From NCBI RefSeq assembly GCF_902459465.1, contig NC_047078.1, forward strand, positions 1,488,001 through 1,552,000: 64,000 bases of DNA. The letters are read 5' to 3'. Each line of letters begins with the position of its first letter. Position 1 is the first letter of the stretch. A model generated the notes under the pieces. It was not told the origin of the DNA and ran no database searches. It saw only the letters and a list, made by a program, of their open reading frames with translations. The translations under genes were made by a program, and so were the position numbers. Below, in pieces: positions 5,155 to 57,378 of this stretch. This stretch comes from Asterias rubens. Lineage: Eukaryota.

Positions 5155-6415
5155 CATAACATGAACAATCCAAATATGGCGTTGGTAGCCGACCCCATGG
5201 GTGGGGCTTCTGCTCCATCTATAAAACGACCCGTTCTCGGCTTCAAAAGTAACGTAGCAACAAGTCCAGTGACCCCGCCCACCATATGCACCGACCCCGC
5301 CCCAGCAATGTCGACCACGCCCATGATCTTCAGCCACCCATTGTCCCCCCACATCCAGTGGGCGGGGATGCAATAAACCACGGTGTTCAGAAATGAGAAG
5401 ATGATGTATATCTCGAGTTTGGTTCGTTCTGCCATCGCTCCACTCACGATTGTTGTAGCGGTGGTCGCGAAGGAAGCGTGGAAAAAGAAATGCGCGAAGA
5501 GGTTACCGACTTCATCGGAGGTTGTGTTACTGGCGTCGACGAAGAAATCACCCACGCCCACGAAGTAATTCGAACCTCCCGCTACGTCCATACCGAAGCT
5601 AAGACCGTAGCCGAACATCCAGTAGGAGACCCCCCCGAATAACACGTCTATTGCATTCTTCACCATTATGTTAACCTGTTTTGAGAAGAAAACAAAGTGA
5701 GAAGTCTAGACCCATGACATCACAATCTCGGGCAGCGCCTTCAGAAATCCCACCCCTTAAAAAAAACGAGTCTGTTTGCCAGACGTTAATACACTTTATC
5801 AAATGCCATCACTATCATGGTCAAGTTCCGTTTATCCATTAAAAGTAACGGTCAGATGCTACTATTCTTTGAACAAAAAGGAACCAGACTATTTTTCCAT
5901 CCAGCCTCGGTTTAATAACACTGATCTGATGGGAGACAAAACCAAGATGGCCGCACCATGATAAAAGTCTATGGCACCGCCTGTGGTACCAGTAAAAAGG
6001 TGACTTGAATGGTTCCACTTAGGGTTGGATGTGATCATGTGTGTGGACTGTGTTGACACTCACATAAAGCCATGTGGCAGATTGTGTACGCTGGATACGG
6101 TAAAAAGTTCTCTCATCCCGTTAAAAACCAACAACCCTGAAACTGACCCCTCTTTACATGTGGAACGGTCCAGTCTAGGATATCAAGGACGCATATTAAC
6201 CCTACCTCGTTCTTCTGCGAGACGCTACCAGATTCAAGGAGTCCGAAACCAGACTGCATTGTGAAGATGATAAAAGCACTAGTTAGAATCCATGTCGCGT
6301 CATCCCATTTGGTAGGTGGATGGTGCTCCTCCAGCACAGTCCAGTTCGAAGAATTCTGAAGATAAGGTGGGAGGGGTTGAAGGAGGGTTGTGTCGATCGT
6401 TGGTATTGGTTCCAT
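5155..6415 (-). CDS. amt: Ammonium transporter (Amt family), first two coding exons; 3' exons lie beyond the left edge of the window
   Basis: Exon 6415-6206 (MEPIP...WDDATWILTSAFIIFTMQSGFGLLESG...KNE, phase 0, GT donor) splices to exon 5675-5155 (VNIMVKNAIDV...FFFHASFATTATTIVSGAMAER...DIAGAGSVHMVGG...GLFMLW, GTAAG donor). Canonical Amt motifs are present. An acceptor at 6421 implies an upstream exon. Confidence 0.93.
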
Positions 6416-6609
6416 CTTCGGCTGCGGTAAAGAGCATGATGTGATGATATAACTATTACAAATATTTCAAGGAAATGTTTTTTGTCAAAGGTCCTTAGTG
6501 AAACCTTATCAAACATTGCTAGATTGTGTCGGAGGTCAGGACCTTAAATCGAAGTCTTATGCAGCGCACGTATCTACCAACAAGGTACGTAAGGCGCTTA
6601 GTACAGAAA

Positions 6610-6830
6610 GATGGGTTTTGAAGTTCTGAGACCCAATATATGTAACACTTTAAGTGTTTATAAGGTGCTATATGGCGCATTCAGCAGCCGCAGCCAGGAA
6701 CACCGGGGCGAACCCCTTCTCTCTTCAATAAGTGCACTTGGTTCGTTTACATGCGTTACACAACACATGGGACCGACAGCTTTACGTCCCATCAGAAGAA
6801 TGAAGCAATGGTATTGTCTTGCTTAAGACA
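6610..6830. mobile_element. SINE-like dispersed repeat fragment
   Basis: 'ttacatgcgttacacaacacatgggaccgacagctttacgtcccatc...gaagcaatgg...gtcttgct' resembles the reverse complement of a SINE core. A related minus-strand SINE piece lies at about 27200-27480. Confidence 0.5.
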
Positions 6831-14900: not shown

Positions 14901-17900
14901 TCAACAACAAACACAAGAACGACAACAAAAATTATCATCATCAACAACAATACCACAGAAACTGACGCAGCAATTAGCAACAACGATTAACAACAAAAAT
15001 ACTACCACGGCAACAAGAACAGAACTTTGACGCAACAGCATCAACACGAATAAGCGAGATATATAATGTTCAAGTACATTCGCCCTTGTAATGGCAATTT
15101 ACCTAATGGAGGCCGGCATTTTCACTGGCAGTAATTGAGTTGATTAAGGTTAGAACCATCATGGATCGATGCCTTTGAAAATTATCTTTGGATTTTTTTA
15201 GATTTAAATATTAATAGAAATGATGAATGACCACTGCGAGTAATTCTCGAGGGAAAACATTATTTAATACTGACTAACATTAATTATTTATAGCAGTACA
15301 AATTCACCAACAAAAGTATCTTACTCTAAAAATAATACTCTCAGAGTAAAGGGGAAACGTTACCTGACATGACTTGAAATCATTGCGTATTTTAATTGCC
15401 GCAATCAAAATAAGAACATGGGGCAAATGGTTCTCAAATCTACGGTAAACCGTTTTTGCTGTGCACGGAAACGGTATCCCAAAGTTTCATGACTGGCACT
15501 TGCTGCATTAGGCGAGGATCAAACATGAGTTAAAGGCAGTGGACACTATTGGTAATTACTCAAAATAACTGTATGCATAAAACCTTACTTGGTAACTATG
15601 TAAGGGGCAGCTGCTGATTGATAGTATAAACCATTGTGAGAAACGGATCCCTCTGAAGCTACGTACTTTTCAAGGAAGTTCACGTATTTGATTTCGAGAC
15701 CTTAGAATTTGAGGTCTCGAAAGCATTTGAAAGCACACAGCTTCGTGTGACCAGGGTGTTTTTTCTTTCATTATAATCTCGCAACTTCGACGACCAATAT
15801 TGAGCTCAAATTTTCACAGGTTTGTTATTTTTATGCATATGTTGAGATACACCAATTGAGAAGACTGGTCTTTGACAATTACCAATAGTGCCCAGTGATT
15901 TAAAATGTTTAGACAATAATTAGAACACACTTGTACTTACTCAATGTTTACGCTGAATCCTTTCATGTACTCCAACAATCGGTTAAAAAATCACTTTGTA
16001 CAGAACAAACTTGTAGGCCTAAGACTAGTGTCCACTACATCGACGAGTCTCTTGAATTGTAAACTTAGCGTCACATGTTTACTTCCCAACCCGTACGGAC
16101 CATACGTAAAGTCAAGACGTCAAGGCAGTATTCTGAACGTCATTGAGAAAAAGTACAGTTTATATCAACTACAACGTCCCAACGGTATTCCAAATCTCAT
16201 ATTCCACACTGAGTCTACAACTATAGCAAGAGAATGACACTGAGGAAAGGATGGCAATAACATCCAACTGTAGAGAGTTTACTATAAATGAAACATCATC
16301 AGCGGCGTGTCAAACCATAGAAGAAACCAACATCCACACTAACTCGATATACAGCAGTTTTGGGGCGTTCGTCGCCGCACGAACAAAAAAGTCAATGGTC
16401 GATTTGTTTCCCTTTCTCTTCGAATCCTTGTTTAAAGAGTGACAATTCATTTTGTCTATTCCCTCAGAGGATGAGGCATCCAGCTTTCACCATCCCATGG
16501 TTATTATTAGATTCCGTGAGCAAATACACTGGAGAGGCTCCCACTCTCCTCAAGCCAAACTCCAATTTATTTTGTGTTTTTCCTTCCCGCGCAGATTGGC
16601 TTTGCCGCGCTAGACACGTACGCGCAACACGGACTTGTAAACACCACGCACGGTTTATTGGATTTCACTCGTACGTGCCCGGGCGGACCCTGCCGTCTGA
16701 TTGCTTCTGAGCGCGGCTGAGTCTACATGCAGTGACCGCTCAACTCTCGGCCTCTTCTTCGCACTACGGCTTTTTAAATGAATACGGGTGTTTTGCAGAC
16801 AGTCACGAACTTCTAAATAATGACGTGAACTGACAAGAAATTTATAACAAACTGCTGAATTGAATAATATCCCTTGACAAATTGATATAAAGGCACTCCA
16901 GACACTATTGGTAATTACTCAAAATAATTGTTAGCATAAAAAATGACTTGGTATTAACGAGCTATGGAGAACTGTTGGTAATAAAAAAAAAAACATTGTG
17001 AGAAACGGCTCCCTCTGAAGTAACGTAGTTTTTAAGAAAGAGGTAATTTCTTACTCAAATAATGAAAGACTTCAACTGAAGCCTTTTATTATTCATCTGC
17101 TGAAAGCACACAAAGTAATGCAACAAGGGTGTTTGTGCTTTCATTATTATCTCGCAACTTCGATAACCAATTTTGAGTTCAAATTTTTACAGGCTTGTTA
17201 TGTAATGCATACGTTGGGATACACCAAGTGAAAATATTGGTCTTTGACGATTACCAAAGGTATCTAGTGCCTTTTAATGAATACGGGTGTTTTTTCAGAA
17301 TGTCACGAATCGACAAACAATAAATGACGTAAACTGACAAGGAATTTATAACAAACTGCTGTATGGAATAATATCCCAAGACAAATTGATTTAATACAGG
17401 CCAAAAAAGTACAACACAGTCAAGTAAACAAAACATTAAGCTAAATACAATCTTAAAATGGTTCAGATTTTTGACTTCCTCATTAAATCTTAAACGTGTA
17501 TTATGACTTCCTCATTAAATCTTAAACGTGTATTGTTTCGGATTAAGTTAAATAAAAAATACCCCATGCAGCTAAAACCATGAAGGAAACCTCCACGCTG
17601 AAACAGTAAAACCCAAGTTATGCATAATTATTAATATCCAATGTGGGGTATGTTTCGTTTATTCTCGGCACATTAAAAGTGACAATATAGGTCACTAGGG
17701 TAGATCCATTTGAAGGATTTGTAACACAAAACACAATGTCCACAGATTTACATTAAACTTACACCGTTTGAAGATAATGATAGTAGAAAGCGTACATTAA
17801 AATAGTACATGCTGAGGTGCTGTAGTTTTTGAGAAACGGGTAAGACAATGTCATGAAAAAAAAACTATTAAAATAATTATCGTCTCATGATCAGTGAGAC

Positions 17901-46965: not shown

Positions 46966-47814
46966 CAAAACGCCTGGAATTAGTAATATAGTTTTTGAGA
47001 AAGAAGTGGATTTCGAGACCTCAGATTTAGAATGTGAGGTCTCGAAATCAAGCATGAAGGCACACAACTTCGTGTGACCATGGTGTGCCAAGGGTGTTTT
47101 TTTTCTTTTTCATTATTATCTCGCAACTTCGACGACCAATTAAGCTCAAATTTTCACAGGTATGCTTTATTATGCATATAATATTGAGATACACCAACTG
47201 TGAAGACTAGTCTTTGACAATTACCAATAGTGTCTCTAAAGTCTCTGAAATGACTGGAATTTTAGTATCAATGGCAAAGCAAATGAGAGGAAGTTTTTCA
47301 TGAATTACAGATTTTTCGATTTACCATATTATGGTATGTTTAAAATGCATGATCTGTTTTGGATATCACGTACAGTATATGGACAGGCCCAGCTACATGG
47401 ACAGGCATATATATTAATGATAATGTTATGAAATAATTATTAAGACAAGCAAAATGTGCAACCAGTGCGTGCGACCTGGTTCCTCATATCGGGATGTTTG
47501 AGCTTAAAAACAGACTTTCTGCTTCTTCTCATCCGTTCACTCTTGCTTTGCTGAGATAGAACAAAAAGCCACTCAAACAGGTTTTTTTTTCCAAACGTAA
47601 GCCTATCTTTTCAAAACTCCTTGCCTCGTTGTTTCCCCCACTCCTACAATCTACAATCCTACAATCTAATCTTGTCTACATTAATGTAATCTTGATACAT
47701 TTTAAGAGGAGTGTCAAATGTTATTACCAGCTTCTATATTTTGTTCTGACATACTGATATTAGATTTATACTAAGCCCGGGAAGGGACAGTGGAAAGAAA
47801 AAAATATGCAGGGG

Positions 47815-48130
47815 CTAATTCGTTCGCACGGTTTAGTAATCCGTTCGAACGAATTAATAATCCGTTCGCACGGTTTAGTAATCCGTTCGAACGAATTAAT
47901 AATCCGTTCGCACGGTTTAGTAATCCGTTCGAACGAATTAATAATCCGTTCGCACGGTTTAGTAATCCGTTCGAACGAATTAATAATCCGTTCGCACAGT
48001 TTAGTAATCCGTTCGCACGGTTTAGTAATCCGTTCGAACGAAATAGTAAACCGTTCGCACGGATTAATAATCCGTTCAAACGAATTAGCAATCCGTTCGA
48101 ACGAATTAGCAATCCGTTTGCACGGTTTAG
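47815..48130. repeat. Subterminal 18/21-bp higher-order tandem repeats in the left TIR (mirror at about 56605-56965)
   Basis: Alternating TAATCCGTTCGAACGAAT and TAATCCGTTCGCACGGTTTAG units. Confidence 0.9.
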
Positions 48131-48196
48131 CCAAAGCATGAAATGGCGCTGCACGCATGCGTAAGCGATCCCCTCATAACAACACTTTGCTTCAAG

Positions 48197-50921
48197 ATGG
48201 CGGAGGGCCGCGACACAAGTTCTGACTCTGATGATGACCGTGTTGGTAAGTTTGTCAACAGATGCATTGCTAATTGAAAAGACAAGGTTGGACACTTAAA
48301 AGGTCCCGTAGAGATTACATAGAGTTGTCGGTATAGGTGTATATTTGTTATAATTCAGGGTAACGTCATTATCACTCTGGTTTACTGGTCTCTGTATCAG
48401 ACCAGCCATCGATTCCACCAAACTCTTCCTAACTTGGGATTAATCTTAGGACTTAGGACGAGTCCCAGCCTTGCACTGAAACATGCAAACCTTAAGATTA
48501 ATCCTAAGTAAGGACGAGTCAATCGCCCCAATTCGAGATAGGATAAATCCTAGTGTTTCGTGAAATCGGCTGCAGGTAAGAATGTTATGTCACATAATGC
48601 AAGTAGGCCACTTTGCATTGACTGGCACCGGCCACAGGATAGTTACGATTATAAAAACTATGGGCCTGAAAAGGCTTGTGTGTTGTGTATGACGGCAAAA
48701 AGGTTATGAGAGTAAGCATATCACAACATACCCAAAATCCTCCTCAAAACTTTGGTCGGATCTGAAGATTTCTCCTTCACAAAAGTCATTTTCATTTCTG
48801 CTAATATATATTTATGTGCATAAATAATTTAGCGTGATGATAAAATAGCTAAATGTCACCCATGTTGAGGTAAACACGTGTGTAGTCATTGTGTAAAGGT
48901 GTTATCAAGCACTCCACAAATTTGTTGTTCATATGCACTGGGCCGTTCCAGGTAGTGACAAGTCTTCCCCAGTGGCTTTCAGAACATAGCATTACCATAA
49001 TTATGTATTACCCATGTTGCTATACAAAATACTGGTGAAATTGTTTCACTGTTGTATGAGGACATTCATAGTAAGGCTAGTATACTTTTGGCTGTTGCAA
49101 TTTATAAAATGTATTGTCAACCGTGGTGATACACCGTTACCTTTTATACTCTGAGTCATTGGAGACACAAGACACAAAGTTTTGACGTTTTGCCACAGCT
49201 TCAATTAAATTTTGTTTTGAAGTTTCGCCAGATACCAAATCTTGTTTGGGCAAGCTGGAATCAACATCAGGGCTAACAGACTTTAATTAATAATTATAAC
49301 ATATCCAAAGGACACCTGCAGTCCAGTGGACCGCATTATTTTGTGTGCATTGCAATGGTTCAAACCATGACTTAAAATTGTGATAAAATCTCACATTAAA
49401 ATTAAAACTAAATAAGTATTTACTTTTTGATGTTTGTAATAAAGAAATTTCTTAATGTTTTGTCTCAACATGCAGATTTCCTCAGTGACAACCTTGAAAA
49501 CGTTCGTCCTTCTTCCAGCGAGAGGAATACCTCAACACCAGGAAACAAAATTCAAAGAATCAAACTCCATCGGGGTCAGGTTTTTGTAGAACTAAACAAC
49601 GCTGTCAAAAACGGCACAGTATCATCGAATGATGCCGTTATTGAAGTCGAGATGATTCTACCTAATGGAACTGTTGAAAAAGGGGAAGATAATGGGGGGG
49701 TCTTCAGAGACGCTCTCGCCGAATACTGGGAAACATTCAACAAGAAATGTGCAACAGGAAGTATCATAACAGTTCCAGTAACCCGACATGACATGAAAGA
49801 AACGTGGAAATATGTTGCTGAAGTTATGATTATTGGGTATAAAACAGTGGGTTATTTCCCCATCAAACTTGCAAAACCATTCATGAATCATTGTTTTGGA
49901 CATAAAACACAGGAAGACGAGCTTGTAAAGACATTCTTGCAGTTTATTCCGGACCACGAGAAAAAGATCATTGAGCAAGCTCTTACAGATTTTCAGAGTG
50001 TTAGTGAGGATGACGAATTTTTGGATATGCTGGATTCCCATGAGGTGAAACCCTGCGTACGTGAGGACAACTTCAAAACAATCTTGTCAGAAGTGGCTCA
50101 TAAAGAACTGATCCAGGATACTGCATACATATCAGATTGCTGGCGGGTTCCTCTCAAACAACGTTTGACACAACTACTACCAAAAGGGGGTCTGGATGAG
50201 TTGTATAACAAGCTAAAGCCCACACCCCACAAAGTGACATCCATCCTGCAGTTTGAGGAACATCTCGAGCGAAAAGAGCAGAGCATCTCTACTTTCTTGA
50301 AGAAATACATAAGGCAATGCCCTGAGGAACGTCTTCTAAGGTTTCTTAGATTTTGCACAGGTACTGCATTTTTTATTTAGACGAAAACACTGACTCTGCT
50401 TTTTTAAATTCAAATAAATCATTAACATGACATTTTAAACTCCATGTTAGTGTAGTCTAACCTGAAGGAAAAGTCAGTTGTACACGTAGGTTTCACTTAA
50501 AAAAATGAAGGTATATTACATGATGTACATTCTATTATTGCGTTACTCGGTTATTTTCTGGGGTTTAAGATTAATTGTACATTAACATTATTTTGATAAT
50601 TATATGTTGCAAAAAGATTGCTTGAACATTGATATGCGTCTCTCAAATGTAGTTTTTCAATTTGTACACTCAGTAGACGTTGTGCACTGTATTTGAGTAA
50701 TGGATGATAAAATCGTTCTTCTAACAGGTGCAGATGTCCTGATTGCATCATCTATTAAGGTGAGGTTTGTAGAACCACTGAGTGACTTCTCAAGAACTCC
50801 TGTTGCACACACCTGCGGTTATGTGCTTGAGTTTCCCAACAGCTATGGCTCCTACTTAGAGTTGGCAGAAGAATTAACCGAGCTCCTTGACTCAAAAGTA
50901 TGGGTAATGGATATCGTATAA
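48197..50921 (+). CDS. Transposon-borne stand-alone HECT-domain E3 ubiquitin ligase, about 375 aa
   Basis: Exons 48197-48245 (in the TIR; inferred), 49476-50360 and 50728-50921, GT-AG and in frame (1128 nt). Motifs GEDNGGVFRD, LLRFLRFCTG and catalytic PVAHTC. Confidence 0.85.
48403..48575. mobile_element. Small Harbinger-like MITE inserted in the left TIR only
   Basis: cagccatcgattccaccaaac...gtttcgtgaaatcggctgcag. It is absent from the mirror position in the right TIR. Confidence 0.6.
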
Positions 50922-52297
50922 ATCAGTAAGCATGAGATAAAGTAAAGTAGCCATTGTAATAATATATGCATTTAGGTTTTATGCTCAACTCTATTTTACT
51001 CTTTTTTTTTTTAAATGCGTCAGTGTCTTCCATCGTGTTCATATAAGAAGTTCTCTAAACCATAATGTTCAATTCGGCACAATTCACAGTGTGTCCATAG
51101 TTCATGCACAGTGCAAATTCATTAACAGTTTATGTTACCATAGTTTGACCATTATTACCATTGGAACAATCATAGGCTGTTTAGGTCATAGGTCAATTTA
51201 GTGTCACAGAAATGGATGGAAGACACAAATACTTTTCTCAGTTGAGAAATAATTATTTTTCCTAATTTTATTTGAAAGCTTATGTATCTTTTTTTTGTGG
51301 TTGCATGATATGCACTGTGTACCAATCTAAGTTTCCGATCCAGCAGTCTAAGCCCCTTATTATTTAGAAAAATAAAAGCTTATAACTGATTTGCAGGGAG
51401 TGCTCTTATTACTGTTATCTAAAGGTAGTTCTTCATGAAGAATGACTGGGAATGGATGAAAAACAAAAAGGTTTGATAAAAATAACTGATATTTGTGTAC
51501 AAAGAAGAAGAAAAATGCTTCATTGTAGATAGACAGTTACGTGTTGTTTTTTATACTCGACAAAGAAATCGATAGACAACTGAAAAACGGTTGACATTTA
51601 TGCAAAGATACATTACAATTTAATGGTTGTTAAACAAATTGAACGAGTCATGCTTGCGTGTTCATAACACTAATTGTAAAGACCAACCCCCCCCCCCCTT
51701 ACAAATTCGGGCATGTGAAAACATTTAATTGTTCTTTCTTTATTCTAAACAGTTGATGATGTATATTTTTAAAAGTATTGATAACAACAAATCATAGGCC
51801 TAGCCTGGAAAGTATTTTCCCAGCCAGTGACGCAAACGGTGGTTCAGCAGTTAAAGTACATTATACGACTTTATTAATGCACACAACATAAAATCGTCAA
51901 AACCTACATACACAAATTAGACAAGTAAAATGAAAGTATCAAACATTTCTGAGCTGCTGTAGGGGTAGTATAAATCGTTTTGAAAGCATTTTATACAGTT
52001 TAAGTGTTATATAAGTGTTGCAGTTTTCTTGTAGTTTTTAAGAGTTTTAACAGTATATCACTTTGTGTTTCTCCCGGGACATTTATGATTTGTTGGCGTA
52101 TCTATAGTGAAAGGAACCTATAGAAAGAACATATTTTTAAGTTAATAATTATTTCAAGTCTGTTTTCTTCCTAGCTAGAATTACTTTGAAAATATTTTCT
52201 GATATTTCCAACAAAAACTTGAATTTCATTCCAATATTTCAAACTCTCTATAACTAAGATGGTCACACCAAATGGCGCACCCATTGCGGGAACTTAA

Positions 52298-52687
52298 AGG
52301 AACACGTTGCCTTGGATCGGGCGAGTTGGTCAATAAAAAGCGTTTGTAACCGGTTGTTATAAAATGCATATTATGGCTAGAAAGACATTTTAAAAGTAGA
52401 ATACAGTGATCCACACAAATAGGCCTCGAAATTGCGTGGTTTTCCTTTTACATCGTGAACTAACACGGTCGGCCATTTTGTGGAGTCAAATTCACAAAAT
52501 GGCCGATCGTGTTAGTTCGCAAAGTAAAAGGAAAACCGCGCAATTTCGAGACATAATTTTGTGTGGATCACTGTATTCTACTTTACTAACATCTTTCTAA
52601 CATAGGCCTATGCATTTTATAACAAACAGTTACAAACGCTTTTTATTGACCAACTCACCCGATCCCGATCCAAGGCATAGTGTTCCT
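52298..52687. mobile_element. Palindromic Kolobok-like MITE nested in the IS3EU element
   Basis: ttaa|aggaacacgttgccttggatcgg...gatccaaggcatagtgttcct|ttaa. Confidence 0.8.
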
Positions 52688-54240
52688 TTAAGCACCACCC
52701 CCCCCCCCCCAACAAACACACAGGCAATAATGTCATTTTTACAAATGAAAACAAAAAAAATAATAACAGTTTGCAAGGGGGAAAAGCTAACTTTGTTACC
52801 GTGGTGGTGGTAAAGTAAACAGATGGTGGTGGTGGTGGTTGGGGGGGGGGGGGGGTATTATATAACGAGCACATTTTCTGTCTGACAAACTAACTAATGA
52901 TACAAATTTAAATGTCAGATCCTAAGTTTACATATAAATAAAACATAAAAATAAAAACATTGTTTAGCAAGACATCCTGTGCGCCACTTTTAAACGGTGT
53001 ATAAAGAAACACGTTTGTATTATACATTTGTAACTGTCCTAATAAAACTATAGCCTTACCATTGAGTTGTCATGCTGACAGGGCCCAATTTCATAGAGCT
53101 GCTTAAGCAGAAAAGAAGCTAAGCACAACAAAATTATGCTTACCAGAATAAGGTAACCAGCCAAAATACCATGTCACATGCACCATTTCTTAATGCCTGC
53201 TCATTTTTGCTAATCACACATTGTAAGCAAAATTACCTGCTTAAGCAGCTCTATGAAATAATTTGGCCCTGATCTTGTCTGAATGGCATACATTCACGGC
53301 AATTAATTTGTTGAACATTTTGCCACGATGCACTTTTTAAAAGATTGTTTACACTATTTTGTTAATCTGTTTTCTGTATTCCATTGTTAGTGTTTACTTG
53401 CCGTTTGTTTCAATAAAAAAGAACACATCAATTCGCCAAGAACTTATTACTTGTCATTCTTATACTTTAACGGCGTCTTAAAAACTGTTGTCAGTTTGCA
53501 CATTATTGGCGAAGTGGCTCAATATTGAGCATTCATCACTTGCTTAACAACACATGGCGGCCTACTTTATTAATTTTAGACAATCGGCTTGAAATGAAAC
53601 GACGATCTCTTCTTCAGCTTTTCGATAACGTATACACTTTAGACTTTATTCACAAGTGTATGATTTATACTTACTTTTTAAACAGTATATTGACCGTAAC
53701 TAAATTAGATCTTTAATAAAAACGCGCTAAATGTATTTTGTGCTTGCACTTCAAGCCCACATGCACTTTTAATTTGAAAGAGTTGTGTGTGTATTATTTT
53801 GAAGTATTCATGTCAAAAGCTTTGACAGAGAAGGCAGAATGCTGGTTTGCAGCTCTAAGACCACAGTCAAACACTCCAAGATCTTGGCCCAATTTCATGG
53901 CTTTTCTTACCGCAGAATTCTGTGCTTGTGATCTCCATTCTTCGCTTACGGTGAAAATGCTGAATTTCGGCGCTAGTTTAAGCAAAGAATGCCTGTGAAA
54001 CGTGAAGTACGCACGCGCCCAAGAAACATTTTCGTGCTAATCTGTGATAAACACTGCTTCCATAATCGCCGATTCGTTGCTTACGGTAAACAGAGCCATG
54101 AAATTGGGCCAGGGTTTTGGTATAGTAACATAATCGTACATAGGACGTGGAAGGCAGAGGTGGGTTGGTTTATCCCATGTTTTGCTAGATCCAATTATGT
54201 TCATTTAGTATTTTCACTAATCTGAAGATTGTAATAAATG

Positions 54241-55627
54241 TTATTCATTTAATACTGACAATACCTCTCTCAGAACGAGGTACAATTCAAGTCCACTGTA
54301 GGCATCATGTGACAAAGTAAGGTGTCTCTTTGCCATGATAAAACTGCAAAGACGGAAGACGTCCTCATCGCATGGAATCGATCCTCGGAAGATACATTCT
54401 TCCTCACATTCGTCTAAATCATCTTGAGTGATCCCCTGTGTGTAGTTTTTAGTGTTATATAATTCTGGCACGAAATACATAACATTTGGTCGGCCGTGTG
54501 GTACATTTTCATTCTTGGATGGGGAAATGATATGCGTATTCCACACATCAGCTGTCCGGTCAAGTTCATCCTGAAAAAAATAGTAATAATAAATTATAAA
54601 AAGTGTTAAAAAGATAATTATAATAAAAATAGATTTGCACACACATATGAAATATTACTGACTCGAAAACTTTCAACTATAAAACACCAAGTTTGTCATC
54701 ATGAGACCTACTCACGTTTGAAATTGACAAATTGTCATAAAAATAAGGAAAACAAGAAAAGAAAGAGCAACACAAGCAGTATAAAACGTGTACCTGGATT
54801 AGGCCGAGGAAACAGAAGAGAACTAGGTTCACGTCAAGAAAGGTGCCATCAAAGTATCCCTCGTTCTTCATTCCATGGAAAAATTCTAGCCAGAACTCAA
54901 TGCATTCTTTCCTCAAAAATCCCCAAAAACTTTCGATCCGTTGATTGTGGTTGCTTGAACCGTACATGAAACTCCTTTCTTCTGCAAAGGCATCACTTCC
55001 ATTACGCCGTAAGAATCTCTGGAATTCCCGTACATAGCAGTTCTCTGTCCCACGGTCTGCTCTTACAATTCTAGGACAGCCTTGAAGACTTTTTACAGTT
55101 TCAACGAAGTAACCGCCGATAACTCTTGGATCACTGCTGGTCCTGTACGCATTGAGCCAGCATAGTTTTCTTGCAAACCCGTCAATGCATCCATTAATGC
55201 ACAGACCGAAGGGACGCAACTTGTCATAGGAGTCCATGTGCCATATATAATTTGGTCCCTTTGAGAAGTAGGACCGTCTTGATAGTCTTCTTGCACGCCG
55301 CATTTCCGTTCCAATAGGATCGACCAAAGACAAGATAACCCTGACGTGTTCTTTTCTTACATTTAGACCATTCAATTTGCATTTTTCAAACATCCATCTG
55401 TATCCATGACAAGAACCTGACCCTTGGAGTTCTCGTCTTATGAAAGCAACCACTTCTTGAAGATTGGTATAATTTTTCCGACGAAAAAGCCCTTGTCTCT
55501 GTAAGGTCCTCTTCAAAGTTCTTTCACTTAAAAGTATTTTGTGTTTTGCAATAAGAATATTTACAATATCCTTATACTCCAGGCCAAGGTGAAAATATAT
55601 CTCTATCAGTTTGTTTCGGTTGGTCAT
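54241..55627 (-). CDS. IS3-like DDE transposase with an N-terminal HTH-like region, about 387 aa
   Basis: Exons 55627-54794 and 54570-54241 (phase 0, GT-AG). Triad WHMD...ADRGTEN...NQRIESFW. N-terminus MTNRNKLIEIYFHLGLEYKDI...SERTLKR. Confidence 0.88.
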
Positions 55628-55970
55628 GTTCGTTCTTGTGGTTGAGAATGGCACAGACTATTTGATGAATTCTGATGCTGGTAGACTATTGAAGCTGTTA
55701 GGGGATGCCGTTAGACTTTGCTCAAAAGACCTAATAGAAACAAAATAAATATAAAGATGTAAAGTGCTATTTCTTTGAGAAGGAATGGAGCATAAATCCA
55801 ACGTTATGGTGGCACATAAATAAAGGGAAATGTATGTACTCTCTTTCTAAATAGCATAATCAAAAGAAGCCTTCATTGGGAAGGTAGGGATGAGAAGTAG
55901 ATGGCTCAGTAAGTTTGGTCATCTAATGAGTCTCCATTATGCAGAACCCCCCCCCCCCCCCCGAAAAAAC

Positions 55971-56012
<42 letters not shown>

Positions 56013-57378
56013 AACAATCTAACAAACAAACAACAAACAACAAGTAACTCGCGTATTTGGGAATAATTTCTCGCTCGCTCTATTAATACTAATGGAGTCA
56101 TTTGTTCTGTAAATCGTTACATAGACATGACACTGTTTTGTAAAACAGCGCATTCTCTCCCGCCATACCCGTCAACTATGTCACCCTTTTGCCGTCAAAA
56201 GAGTCAACCACAAGCTTTTTTAGACCCACATTCAATTGTTATAATAATTATGATAGTGTGATCTTGTGGCCAGTGCCAGTCAATACTAAAGGGCATATAC
56301 GTACAAAAGTAAGTAACATTAAAATTCGTAGGTGTTTTACACAGACCAAAGTGATAATTACATTACCCTGAATCAAAACAACTATACACACTACCGACAA
56401 CTCTATATAGTCTATATGAGACCTATTAAGTTTCAATTAACAATGTATCTGTATCCAATCATACTGATCAAGATTGAAAAACTTACCAACACGGTCATCA
56501 TCAGATACGTCAGGTTTACTTGCGTCGCTGCCCTCCGCCATCTTGAAGCAAAGTGTTGTTGTGAGGGGATCGCTTACGCATGCGTGCAGCGCCATTTCAT
56601 GCCTTAGTTAAACCGTGCGAACGCATTACTAATTCGTTCGAACGAATTGCTAATTCGTTCGAACGGATTACTAATTCGTTCGAACGGATTATTAAACCGT
56701 GCGAACGGATTACTAATTCGTTCGAACGGATTACTAATTCGTTCGAACGGATTATTAAACCGTGCGAACGGATTACTAATTCGTTCAAACGGATTGCTAA
56801 TTCGTTCGAACGGATAACTAAACCGTGCGAACGGATTATTAATTCGTTCGAACGGATTACTAAACCGTGCGAACGGATTATTAATTCGTTCGAACGGATT
56901 ACTAAACCGTGCGAACGGATTATTAATTCGTTCGAACGGATTACTAAACCGTGCGAACGAATTAGCCACTGCATATTTTTTTCTTTCCACTGTCCCTTCC
57001 TGGGCTCCGTAGATTTATCAAGTCAGGATGGTTCTTTTACAAAAACACAACACCATCATCGGTATAGGGTCACAAATGACCTGCCTAATGTCACATTGAA
57101 CAACTCAAATCCTTCCCTCAGCTCTCTTGAGTTGTGTTCATCCTTGAACCCCTTTCACAAAGAACATTTATCATGGTGCCGCCATCTTGATTTTGCTCCC
57201 ATTCAAATCAAAGCAATCAAACCGAGGCTGGAAGGAGAAACAGTCTGGTTCCCTTTTGTACAATGAGTAATAGTATATTTTATTGCAAAGGAAACGAGGT
57301 ACATGACCAAGATGGTGACAGCATGATAATGGTCTTTTGTTGCATTGGAAAAAAATACCATGTTAGCCTTACAGCTAA

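What the first reader, a model, noticed from the sequence alone, without database searches (positions are those of the whole stretch)
48197..56541. Mirror-image first exons inside the two TIRs could drive both transposon genes
Seen: each TIR contains caagATGGCGGAGGGC...GATGATGACCGTGTTG|GTAAGT, a strong start context plus a consensus donor facing inward. Left (48197-48245, MAEGRDTSSDSDDDRV, phase 1) joins in frame to the HECT exon acceptor at 49476. Right (56541-56487, MAEGSDASKPDVSDDDRV) joined to the acceptor at 55730 gives a short uORF (...GLLSKV*) that stops about 85 nt before the transposase ATG at 55627. Inference: one duplicated promoter/exon module transcribes both genes in step. It serves as the N-terminus of the ligase but as a uORF that may dampen transposase translation, a built-in way to set ligase above transposase. 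Convergent transcription could also produce dsRNA.
Basis: partly seen in the sequence, partly recalled or inferred. Interest (0 to 1): 0.8.

Follow-up and report, generated by a model that had tools for sequence, protein, structure and literature searches.

The report
Leader exons inside transposon inverted repeats
Both long terminal repeats of a starfish DNA transposon carry the same start-codon-plus-splice-donor module, probably a built-in promoter and first exon for its two genes, but public RNA data do not show the proposed splice on the transposase side.

Summary

The element (47769-57011, Asterias rubens) is an IS3EU-type DNA transposon: TA..TA termini, a 6-bp target duplication and an rva_4 transposase. 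A HECT-like gene runs convergent to the transposase. The two modules are not independent, because each lies inside a ~620-670-bp inverted repeat.

Comparison supports a TIR-embedded leader exon. A second A. rubens family and a rainbowfish family mirror a leader exon plus donor in both TIRs. Some relatives instead start the transposase ATG right after the arrays.

On the left, a related sea-star copy shares the acceptor. Its exon there is open from that acceptor in phase 1 and has no ATG, so it needs an upstream coding exon.

On the right, three RNA-like runs show the internal transposase intron spliced but no 56487^55730 joint. Contigs run unspliced across both the donor and the acceptor.

The uORF is not conserved: the second family's leader exon has no ATG.

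MuDR of maize is the known precedent. The scan noted this stretch before (s1-180010). Verdict: partly supported, moderate interest.

The parts
47763..47768 (.). Left target-site duplication GATTTA
   Evidence: the same hexamer flanks both ends.
57012..57017 (.). Right target-site duplication GATTTA
47769..48385 (+). Left TIR (~617 nt). Terminus TACTAAGCCC, then arrays, promoter-like unique part, exon 1 and the first ~140 nt of intron 1.
   Evidence: The terminal motif TACGGAGCCC is shared with fish, urchin and bivalve relatives.
56343..57011 (-). Right TIR (~669 nt), mirror image of the left one
47816..48130 (.). Left subterminal array: 21/42-bp units, 15 copies. Inferred transposase-binding repeats.
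   Evidence: Similar arrays occur in all relatives.
56609..56964 (.). Right subterminal array: 21/42-bp units, ~17 copies
48153..48162 (+). 10-bp palindrome ACGCATGCGT (NRF1-site-like), 35 nt upstream of the ATG. Mirror copy at 56585-56576.
   Evidence: Sequence. The factor assignment is from my own knowledge and was not tested.
48193..48203 (+). CAAGATGGCGG, a YY1/TISU-like element containing the ATG. Mirror copy at 56545-56535.
   Evidence: Sequence. The TISU core AAGAUGG and its YY1 identity are from PMC2518114.
48197..48245 (+). Left TIR exon, coding part: 16 codons + 1 nt, phase 1. Donor GTAAGT at 48246-48251.
   Evidence: In frame with exon 2.
48246..49475 (+). Putative intron 1 of the HECT-like gene (1230 nt). 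Its use was not tested by RNA.
   Evidence: no coding remnant inside. The last ~55 nt plus the AG align with a related sea-star copy.
49476..50360 (+). HECT-like gene exon 2
   Evidence: Homology to fish and sea-star proteins starts at 49475.
50728..50921 (+). HECT-like gene exon 3, with the AHTC catalytic-Cys motif and the stop codon
   Evidence: The exon 2/3 join matches the NCBI models P0001 and P0013. X3 contig 8 breaks at this acceptor. Pfam HECT 29.6 bits for P0001.
56487..56541 (-). Right TIR exon (18 codons + 1 nt). Donor GTAAGT at 56486-56481.
   Evidence: X1 contig 7 (56217-56530) runs through the donor unspliced.
55731..56486 (-). Proposed leader intron of the transposase gene (756 nt). 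Present, unspliced, in the RNA contigs laid on it.
   Evidence: X4 contig 19 covers 55473-55941 at depth 15.2, against 20.2 for the coding exons. No 56487^55730 joint is listed.
55628..55730 (-). Transposase 5' leader behind the candidate acceptor (103 nt)
   Evidence: The acceptor region is alignable with the related sea-star contig L038.
54794..55627 (-). Transposase coding exon 1 (278 codons, rva_4 integrase core)
54571..54793 (-). Transposase intron (223 nt), shown spliced
   Evidence: one contig each in X1, X3 and X4 carries the joint. The spliced form is absent from the genome assembly.
54241..54570 (-). Transposase coding exon 2 with stop (109 codons)

Best explanation
The ATG...GTAAGT module is one component of the long terminal inverted repeats of an IS3EU/GingerRoot-type DNA transposon of Asterias rubens. 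The element carries a transposase gene and, convergent to it, a HECT-like gene. Each TIR contains, from outside inward: (1) the terminal motif; (2) a 21/42-bp repeat array, presumably the transposase-binding sites; (3) a short CpG-rich promoter-like segment with a 10-bp palindrome and a YY1/TISU-like CAAGATGGCGG; (4) a ~50-nt leader exon ending in a consensus 5' splice site; (5) the first ~140 nt of the following intron. Because the TIRs are copies of each other, both genes inherit the same promoter and leader-exon cassette facing inward. On the left, the cassette most likely supplies the initiator ATG and 16 residues of the 375-aa HECT-like protein, through a phase-1 splice to 49476. This is inferred, not shown. 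On the right, the cassette begins the transposase 5' leader. In the RNA data available, that leader is present unspliced: 914 nt with 20 upstream ATGs. The predicted splice to 55730 is at best a minor or tissue-restricted isoform. In either form the TIR ATG opens a short upstream ORF, but this looks like a by-product of sharing the cassette rather than a conserved regulatory device.
For: Element identity: TA..TA termini and a 6-bp TSD GATTTA, matching the IS3EU definition in PMC10045372. The transposase scores rva_4 at E=4e-23. Five 98-100% identical copies and about 11 deletion derivatives exist. The transposase plus convergent HECT-like gene pair recurs in Misgurnus, Melanotaenia, Sinanodonta, Lytechinus, Apostichopus and an unnamed contig.

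Cassette conservation. A second A. rubens family (L073:78-7433) has ~900-bp TIRs. Both arms include a leader exon, the donor ACAAG|GTAATA and ~440 nt of intron, and its transposase ATG sits directly behind an acceptor (CAG|ATG). The Melanotaenia element (L035:8829-18678) has 612-bp TIRs with CAG|GTAAGT in both arms. It has strong acceptors 75 nt before the transposase ATG and 1 nt before the HECT-gene ATG. Where there is no leader intron (Sinanodonta, Apostichopus, L081), the transposase ATG follows the arrays within about 35-330 nt, so the promoter must lie in the TIR there too.

Left join. It is in frame. Homology to relatives starts exactly at the acceptor. The acceptor and ~55 nt of intron align with the related sea-star contig L032. 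The conserved coding exon behind that acceptor is open from it in phase 1, has no ATG, and is closed by a stop 5 codons upstream in the unspliced DNA.

RNA. The transposase is transcribed and its internal intron is spliced in three runs from three studies. No DNA copy of that joint exists in the assembly. Contigs reach into the unique part of the right TIR (X4, 56539-56604).
Against: No RNA joint 56487^55730 was listed, while contigs cross the donor (X1, 56217-56530) and the acceptor (X4, 55473-55941) unspliced. Nine joints in that output were not shown, and contigs drop rare forms, so a minor isoform is not excluded.

The left junction was not tested with RNA at all, because the single read-laying run went to the right side. 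X3 contig 8 carries about 1630 nt upstream of exon 2, more than a fully spliced mRNA would hold. That hints at intron-1 retention or a chimeric contig.

The NCBI models of two other copies start at internal Met codons. This is uninformative, but it is not supportive either.

Contigs are unstranded and pool five copies plus the MITE-like derivatives. The dominant X1 transcript carries an extra T at 55472, so it comes from a variant copy. Transcription start sites are unknown. The factor assignments (YY1, NRF1) rest on motif resemblance only.
Confidence: 0.6

Rival explanations
1. Both TIR donors are used constitutively. The left exon is the ligase N-terminus. The right exon, spliced to 55730, forms a 24-codon uORF selected to hold transposase translation below ligase translation.
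For: The sequence geometry is exact. The acceptor 55730 has a good polypyrimidine tract and is alignable with a related sea-star copy. The two indels between the left and right exon copies are both 3 nt and keep the frame. In Melanotaenia, the TIR ATG spliced to the transposase-side acceptor also gives a short uORF that ends 4 codons after the joint.
Against: No such joint is listed in three runs that show the internal intron joint, and there are unspliced contigs across both splice sites. The second A. rubens family has no ATG in its leader exon. In Melanotaenia the same TIR ATG would be an out-of-frame overlapping uORF for the HECT gene as well, so no ligase-above-transposase logic is conserved. 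All three substitutions between the left and right exon copies change the amino acid.
Confidence: 0.12
2. Coincidence or relic. The TIR module matters only for transposition or as a relic, and both genes use internal promoters. The HECT-like protein would start at the ATG at 49430, read from an unspliced transcript. The transposase mRNA would start between 55731 and about 55950.
For: An in-frame ATG at 49430 gives a protein of about the same length. The region 55731-55941 is transcribed. Several families have no leader intron at all. NCBI models do not include the TIR exon.
Against: The ATG at 49430 has a poor context (T at -3 and at +4) and lies in the polypyrimidine and branch-point region of a shared acceptor. 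The related sea-star exon behind that acceptor cannot be translated without an upstream exon. Donors recur at a comparable position just inward of the arrays in three families whose TIR sequences are otherwise unalignable. RNA contigs continue upstream through 56048-56530 and 56539-56604.
Confidence: 0.15
3. Regulated leader-intron retention. The transposase leader intron (55731-56486) is usually retained, giving a 914-nt leader with 20 upstream ATGs that blocks translation. It is removed only in certain cells, for example the germline, leaving a 158-nt leader with 3 upstream ATGs.
For: Unspliced leader RNA occurs in all three runs, while the internal intron is cleanly removed. Donor and acceptor are retained in relatives. 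The precedent of tissue-specific intron retention in the P element is from my own knowledge. Splicing failure in MuDR is cited in the reference list of PMC3440606.
Against: No spliced form has been seen at all. The tissues of the runs are unknown. Contig depths are unreliable for a five-copy element.
Confidence: 0.18

Closest known systems
MuDR (Mutator) of maize
   Same: It has two convergently transcribed genes, the transposase mudrA and a second gene mudrB. Promoters and transcription start sites lie within the ~215-bp TIRs. Antisense RNA arises from failed termination between the genes (PMC3440606).
   Different: It belongs to a different superfamily (MULE transposase, 9-bp TSD by my own knowledge), in plants. 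Here the TIRs are three times longer and contain, besides the promoter region, a whole leader exon, its 5' splice site and part of the intron. The second gene is HECT-like.
[quoted passage not shown]
   Same: TA..TA termini, 6-bp TSD, and an IS3/integrase-like DDE transposase without an HHCC finger (PMC10045372).
   Different: Neither paper I searched for these terms mentions a HECT or ubiquitin gene. I searched the GingerRoot paper for promoter and subterminal repeats, and it mentions neither. I did not search Repbase.
[quoted passage not shown]
   Same: The core AAGATGG followed by CGG. TISU acts in both transcription and translation, lies within +30 of the start site, and has a median 5' UTR of 12 nt (PMC2518114).
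   Different: TISU was defined in mammalian housekeeping genes. Here there is only a sequence match, in an echinoderm transposon. TSS position and factor binding are unknown. The second A. rubens family has a YY1-like motif in the opposite orientation, without an ATG.
Upstream-ORF and retained-intron control of transposase expression (e.g. P element third intron)
   Same: A transposase mRNA whose translatability would depend on removal of an intron. This comparison is from my own knowledge.
   Different: Here the intron lies in the 5' leader, not in the coding region, and neither regulation nor any spliced form has been observed.

Membership tests
IS3EU/GingerRoot DNA transposon | TA..TA termini | tested here: met
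   The ends read TACTAAGCCC... and ...GGGCTCCGTA. Criterion from PMC10045372.
IS3EU/GingerRoot DNA transposon | Target-site duplication of about 6 bp | tested here: met
   GATTTA on both flanks.
IS3EU/GingerRoot DNA transposon | IS3/integrase-type DDE transposase | tested here: met
   Pfam rva_4 at E=4e-23, and rve weakly. 536 homologues, all listed ones carrying rva_4.
IS3EU/GingerRoot DNA transposon | Phylogenetic placement with the Repbase IS3EU and GingerRoot transposases | not tested
MuDR-type TIR-promoter architecture (works like it; not a member of Mutator) | Two convergent genes between the TIRs | tested here: met
   HECT-like gene on the plus strand, transposase on the minus strand. 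Both are transcribed and spliced.
MuDR-type TIR-promoter architecture (works like it; not a member of Mutator) | Transcription start sites inside the TIRs | tested here: inconclusive
   RNA contigs reach 56539-56604 and 56217-56530 in the right TIR, but they are unstranded, pool all copies and show no 5' ends. In families without a leader intron, the ATG follows the arrays within about 35-330 nt.
MuDR-type TIR-promoter architecture (works like it; not a member of Mutator) | Mutator-superfamily (MULE) transposase | tested here: not met
   The transposase is of the rva_4/rve type. This is an analogy only.
TISU element | Sequence core AAGATGG with flanking GCGG | tested here: met
   CAAGATGGCGG at 48193-48203 and 56545-56535. 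Core as given in PMC2518114.
TISU element | Location within about 30 nt downstream of the TSS; YY1 binding | not testable with these tools
   This needs CAGE or 5' RACE and binding assays.
Regulatory uORF | The uORF is present in the mature mRNA upstream of the main ORF | tested here: inconclusive
   The spliced form was not seen. The unspliced leader, with a 34-codon uORF from the same ATG plus 19 further uATGs, is covered by contigs.
Regulatory uORF | Conservation of the uORF in related elements | tested here: not met
   The family-2 leader exon has no ATG. The Melanotaenia TIR ATG is out of frame upstream of both genes.
HECT ubiquitin ligase (for the label 'ligase') | HECT-domain match with the catalytic Cys | tested here: inconclusive
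   Pfam HECT scores 29.6 bits (cut-off 23.9) for P0001 but covers only profile positions 196-294 of 306 (C-lobe). P0003 falls below the cut-off. The AHTC motif is present. No N-lobe was recognised and activity is untested.

The most novel reading that the evidence does not exclude
In this lineage of animal IS3EU-type transposons, each TIR is at once a recombination site and a complete promoter, leader-exon and splice-donor cassette. Removal or retention of the transposase leader intron (3 versus 20 upstream ATGs) would be the switch deciding when transposase is made, while the same cassette gives the HECT-like partner its start codon.
Probability: 0.15. Interest if true: 0.6.

Novelty: new variant of a known kind. 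Interest (0 to 1): 0.4.

Why it matters
IS3EU/GingerRoot elements are among the least studied eukaryotic DNA transposons. The two papers I searched for these terms mention no HECT or ubiquitin gene, and the GingerRoot paper mentions no promoter. If each TIR is also the promoter and first exon of the gene next to it, the element is transcriptionally self-sufficient wherever it lands. Any change in a TIR then affects mobility and expression together. That parallels MuDR in plants and would be a second, independent case in animals. The A. rubens copies are 98-100% identical, transcribed and correctly spliced, so the family may be active and open to experiment. Practically, the finding corrects gene models: the NCBI models of the HECT-like gene start at internal Met codons. 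It also warns that the proposed uORF dosage device is not supported.

Tried and rejected
1. RNA test of the left junction. This was not possible: only one read-laying run of at most 6000 nt was allowed, and I spent it on the right side.

2. Scan of JGI metagenome contigs for either spliced junction: 0 hits. A second scan for the TIR ATG...GGTAAGT pattern gave 5 loci, none related to the element.

3. Search of the A. rubens assembly for processed DNA copies carrying either TIR-exon junction, or the spliced transposase junction: none. The first attempt found the machine busy.

4. Tachysurus locus L031. I first took the inverted repeats at 6078-6617 and 15569-15998, which have GTGAGT donors, for the element's TIRs. 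The family's terminal motif lies at L031:8559, so those repeats belong to another element. I dropped that evidence.

5. Resemblance of MAEGRDT..SSDSDDDRV to the N-terminus of the goby protein P0003. That N-terminus is an internal Met within the long-form ORF of Melanotaenia, and both stretches are acidic low-complexity sequence. I do not count it as evidence.

6. A remnant of the long N-terminal domain of relatives inside intron 1: none found.

7. NCBI models and cluster members of the HECT-like protein and the transposase. They gave only 5'-truncated models and unspliced DNA contigs that break at the poly-T/poly-G tract 55942-56047.

8. Depth arithmetic on the contigs, to infer partial splicing. 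I abandoned it. The dominant X1 transcript comes from a variant copy (+T at 55472), nothing was laid on 55566-55763 in X1, and depths pool several copies.

9. Earlier notes of this scan by words: nothing beyond the sister note on the same stretch.

Full report
OBSERVATION. Reading the two ends directly confirms every coordinate in the finding.
- Left: ATG at 48197; the exon ends at 48245 (16 codons + 1 nt); GTAAGT at 48246; acceptor AG at 49474-49475. The join G+AT continues the long open frame (..RV|DFLSDNLENV..).
- Right, minus strand: ATG at 56541; the exon ends at 56487 (18 codons + 1 nt); GTAAGT at 56486; acceptor AG at 55732-55731. The join reads GLLSKV-stop (stop at 55713-55711), 83 nt before the transposase ATG at 55627.
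- The two modules are the two arms of one inverted repeat. They are 63/66 identical just upstream of the ATG and 46/55 in the exon, with two 3-nt indels that keep the frame. The donor is identical, and similarity continues about 140 nt into the intron. 'Mirror image' therefore adds no statistical weight by itself.

WHAT THE ELEMENT IS.
- The element spans 47769-57011. It has TA..TA termini and a 6-bp target duplication GATTTA, which are the hallmarks given for IS3EU/GingerRoot in PMC10045372.
- The organism is Asterias rubens: P0001 is a 100% match to LOC117303616.
- The TIRs are about 617 and 669 nt long, with 21/42-bp arrays at 47816-48130 and 56609-56964.
- Gene models from sequence:
  - a HECT-like protein of 375 aa (48197-48245 + 49476-50360 + 50728-50921);
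  - an rva_4 transposase of 387 aa on the minus strand (55627-54794 + 54570-54241; Pfam E=4e-23).
- The genome holds five full copies, 98-100% identical, and about 11 short deletion derivatives.
- The pairing of transposase with a convergent HECT-like gene recurs in fishes (Misgurnus, Melanotaenia), a bivalve (Sinanodonta), a sea urchin (Lytechinus), a sea cucumber (Apostichopus) and an unnamed contig. The terminal motif TACGGAGCCC is shared across phyla.

RNA TEST, RIGHT SIDE. Only one read-laying run of at most 6000 nt was available. I used it on 50650-56620 with four runs.
- Three runs from three studies (X1, X3, X4) each carry a contig in which the transposase intron 54571-54793 is removed (GT..AG on the minus strand). 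X1 and X4 have essentially no depth inside that intron.
- The spliced form does not exist as DNA in the assembly. These runs therefore behave as RNA, and the transposase is transcribed and spliced.
- The proposed joint 56487^55730 is not among the listed joints. Nine weaker ones were not shown.
- X4 contig 19 runs continuously from 55473 to 55941 across the acceptor, at depth 15.2 against 20.2 for the coding exons. X1 contig 7 runs from 56217 to 56530 across the donor. Further contigs cover 56048-56416 and 56539-56604.
- The leader thus exists as unspliced RNA reaching into the unique part of the right TIR. A spliced form is at best minor in these samples.
- Caveats: contigs are unstranded, pool all copies and drop rare variants. 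The dominant X1 transcript has an extra T at 55472, so it comes from a variant copy. X1 also has a hole at 55566-55763. For these reasons I do not interpret the depths further.

LEFT SIDE. This side has no direct RNA test.
- X3 contig 8 (4087 nt) breaks at 50724, which is the exon-3 acceptor with 4 ambiguous bases. This confirms the exon 2/3 splice, as do the NCBI models.
- The same contig holds about 1630 nt upstream of exon 2. That is too much for a fully spliced mRNA, so intron 1 may be retained in it or the contig is chimeric.
- Indirect support is reasonable:
  - Homology with fish and sea-star proteins begins exactly at 49475.
  - No remnant of the longer N-terminal domain of relatives lies in the intron.
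  - The last ~55 nt of the intron and the AG align with a related sea-star contig, L032. In that contig the acceptor precedes a conserved coding exon (...FFDFLTDDRNLPDETVKKMIAEK|GT, homologous to the first coding exon of the fish genes).
  - That exon is open from the acceptor in the same phase 1 and contains no usable ATG. In unspliced DNA it is closed by a stop five codons upstream. The sea-star lineage therefore needs an upstream ATG-bearing exon of phase 1, which is what the A. rubens TIR exon is.
- The alternative start at 49430 has a poor context and sits in the acceptor's pyrimidine tract.

COMPARATIVE TEST OF THE CASSETTE.
- A second A. rubens family (transposase 55% identical; L073:78-7433) has ~900-bp TIRs. 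On both arms they include the arrays, a ~105-nt leader, the donor ACAAG|GTAATA and ~440 nt of intron. Its transposase ATG lies directly behind an acceptor (CAG|ATG), so an upstream exon is required. Its HECT-type gene has its own ATG in the conserved first coding exon.
- The Melanotaenia boesemani element (L035:8829-18678) has 612-bp TIRs, 99.8% identical. Both arms carry CAG|GTAAGT about 85 nt inside the arrays and then 215 nt of intron. Strong acceptors lie 75 nt before the transposase ATG and 1 nt before the annotated HECT-gene ATG.
- Misgurnus and Lytechinus also have leader introns on the transposase side, but there the exon lies at or beyond the edge of the TIR identity.
- Sinanodonta, Apostichopus and L081 have no leader intron. 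Their ATG follows the arrays within about 35-330 nt.
- Two conclusions follow. The promoter of at least the transposase gene must lie in or at the TIR throughout the family. And a leader exon plus donor duplicated in both TIRs is a recurrent, lineage-specific elaboration rather than an accident of this one element.

PROMOTER MOTIFS. These are inference only.
- Between the arrays and the ATG lie a perfect 10-bp palindrome ACGCATGCGT (48153-48162 and 56585-56576) and CAAGATGGCGG.
- The latter matches the TISU/YY1 element, which in mammals sits within +30 of the start site and drives translation from very short 5' UTRs (PMC2518114).
- Family 2 has a YY1-like motif at the same place in the opposite orientation, hence without an ATG.

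THE uORF IDEA.
- If the leader is spliced, it is 158 nt long with 3 upstream ATGs. If unspliced, it is 914 nt long with 20, and the TIR ATG opens a 34-codon ORF.
- Either way the transposase ATG is not the first, so some dampening is likely on general grounds. But the device is not conserved. Family 2 has no ATG in the leader exon. In Melanotaenia the TIR ATG would give a short uORF before the transposase and an out-of-frame overlapping uORF for the HECT gene.
- I therefore read the right-hand uORF as a side effect of sharing a cassette whose ATG is useful on the left. Regulated retention of the leader intron is an open and more interesting possibility.

CONVERGENT TRANSCRIPTS.
- The spliced HECT-gene contig extends to at least 52291, and the spliced transposase contig to at least 53352.
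- The interval between them is occupied by very high-copy repeats, so overlap, and hence dsRNA, is neither shown nor excluded.

COMPARISON WITH WHAT IS KNOWN.
- The closest system is MuDR of maize. It has two convergent genes and promoters and start sites within the TIRs (PMC3440606).
- This element works like MuDR but is not a member of that group: its transposase is of the integrase type, its TSD is 6 bp, and its host is an animal. It goes further than MuDR in that the exon, the donor and part of the intron lie inside the TIR.
- In the IS3EU and GingerRoot papers I searched for these terms, I found no mention of a HECT or ubiquitin gene. The GingerRoot paper, which I also searched for promoter and subterminal repeats, mentions neither.

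VERDICT.
- I give 0.6 to the cassette explanation, about 0.6 to the left exon being coding, under 0.5 to any use of the right splice, and about 0.12 to the selected-uORF model.
- Interest is 0.4. This is a useful, conserved piece of transposon anatomy with a known plant precedent. The most eye-catching claim is not borne out by the data I could reach.
- The same stretch was noted before in this scan as an IS3-like transposon with a HECT gene (s1-180010). My end-point and TSD checks agree with it.

Noticed in passing
G000:C10:5967078-5967320 and about 10 similar places (loci L006-L016, L023-L030): These are short MITE-like deletion derivatives of the element, 92-95% identical to it. The left TIR runs on to about 48297-48300 (exon, donor and ~50 nt of intron) and is joined directly to a right TIR that stops exactly at the G of its ATG (56539). 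X4 contig 21 ends at 56539, so these derivatives may be transcribed too.
   Followed up: partly
L073:78-7433 (G000:C15:12045277-12052632); related copies L050, L054: A second IS3EU-type family in A. rubens, with a transposase 53-55% identical to this one. It has ~900-bp TIRs, 22-bp arrays and a HECT gene with a canonical ...GFGLF C-terminus. In this copy the YY1-like motif is deleted on the HECT side.
   Followed up: partly
window 52293-52620, 53080-53240, 54087-54110: Very high-copy repeats are nested in the central non-coding part of the element. Word depths reach 10^4-10^5 in all four runs, with many loose ends, which suggests SINE- or MITE-like insertions. They lie in the gap between the mapped 3' extents of the two mRNAs.
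   Followed up: no
window 55472: The dominant transposase transcript in run X1 (depth 42) has an extra T after 55472, a frameshift at about codon 52. A minority contig in X4 has it too. The most expressed copy in that animal may therefore be defective.
   Followed up: no
G000:C15:14113666-14117364 (L053): This full-length copy differs from the window copy mainly by about 60 single-base indels over 3.7 kb (98% identity), which create many stops. The pattern looks like unpolished assembly rather than biology.
   Followed up: partly
window 49476-50921 versus L032, L035, L033, L037: The A. rubens HECT-like protein (375 aa) is an N-terminally shortened form. Relatives encode 611-680 aa, with an extra N-terminal domain of roughly 260-300 aa (MSDxxLxKxxPKxGDRxAxRQYC...) and a conserved first coding exon (..FLxFL....L.D..I.K.I.EK).
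   Followed up: partly
window 55942-56047: A poly-T / poly-G tract of about 100 nt lies in the transposase leader. Every public DNA contig of the element breaks there.
   Followed up: no
The transposase (50-68% identity) and the HECT-like protein (49-55%) are unusually similar between the starfish and teleost fishes. This suggests horizontal transfer or very strong constraint.
   Followed up: no
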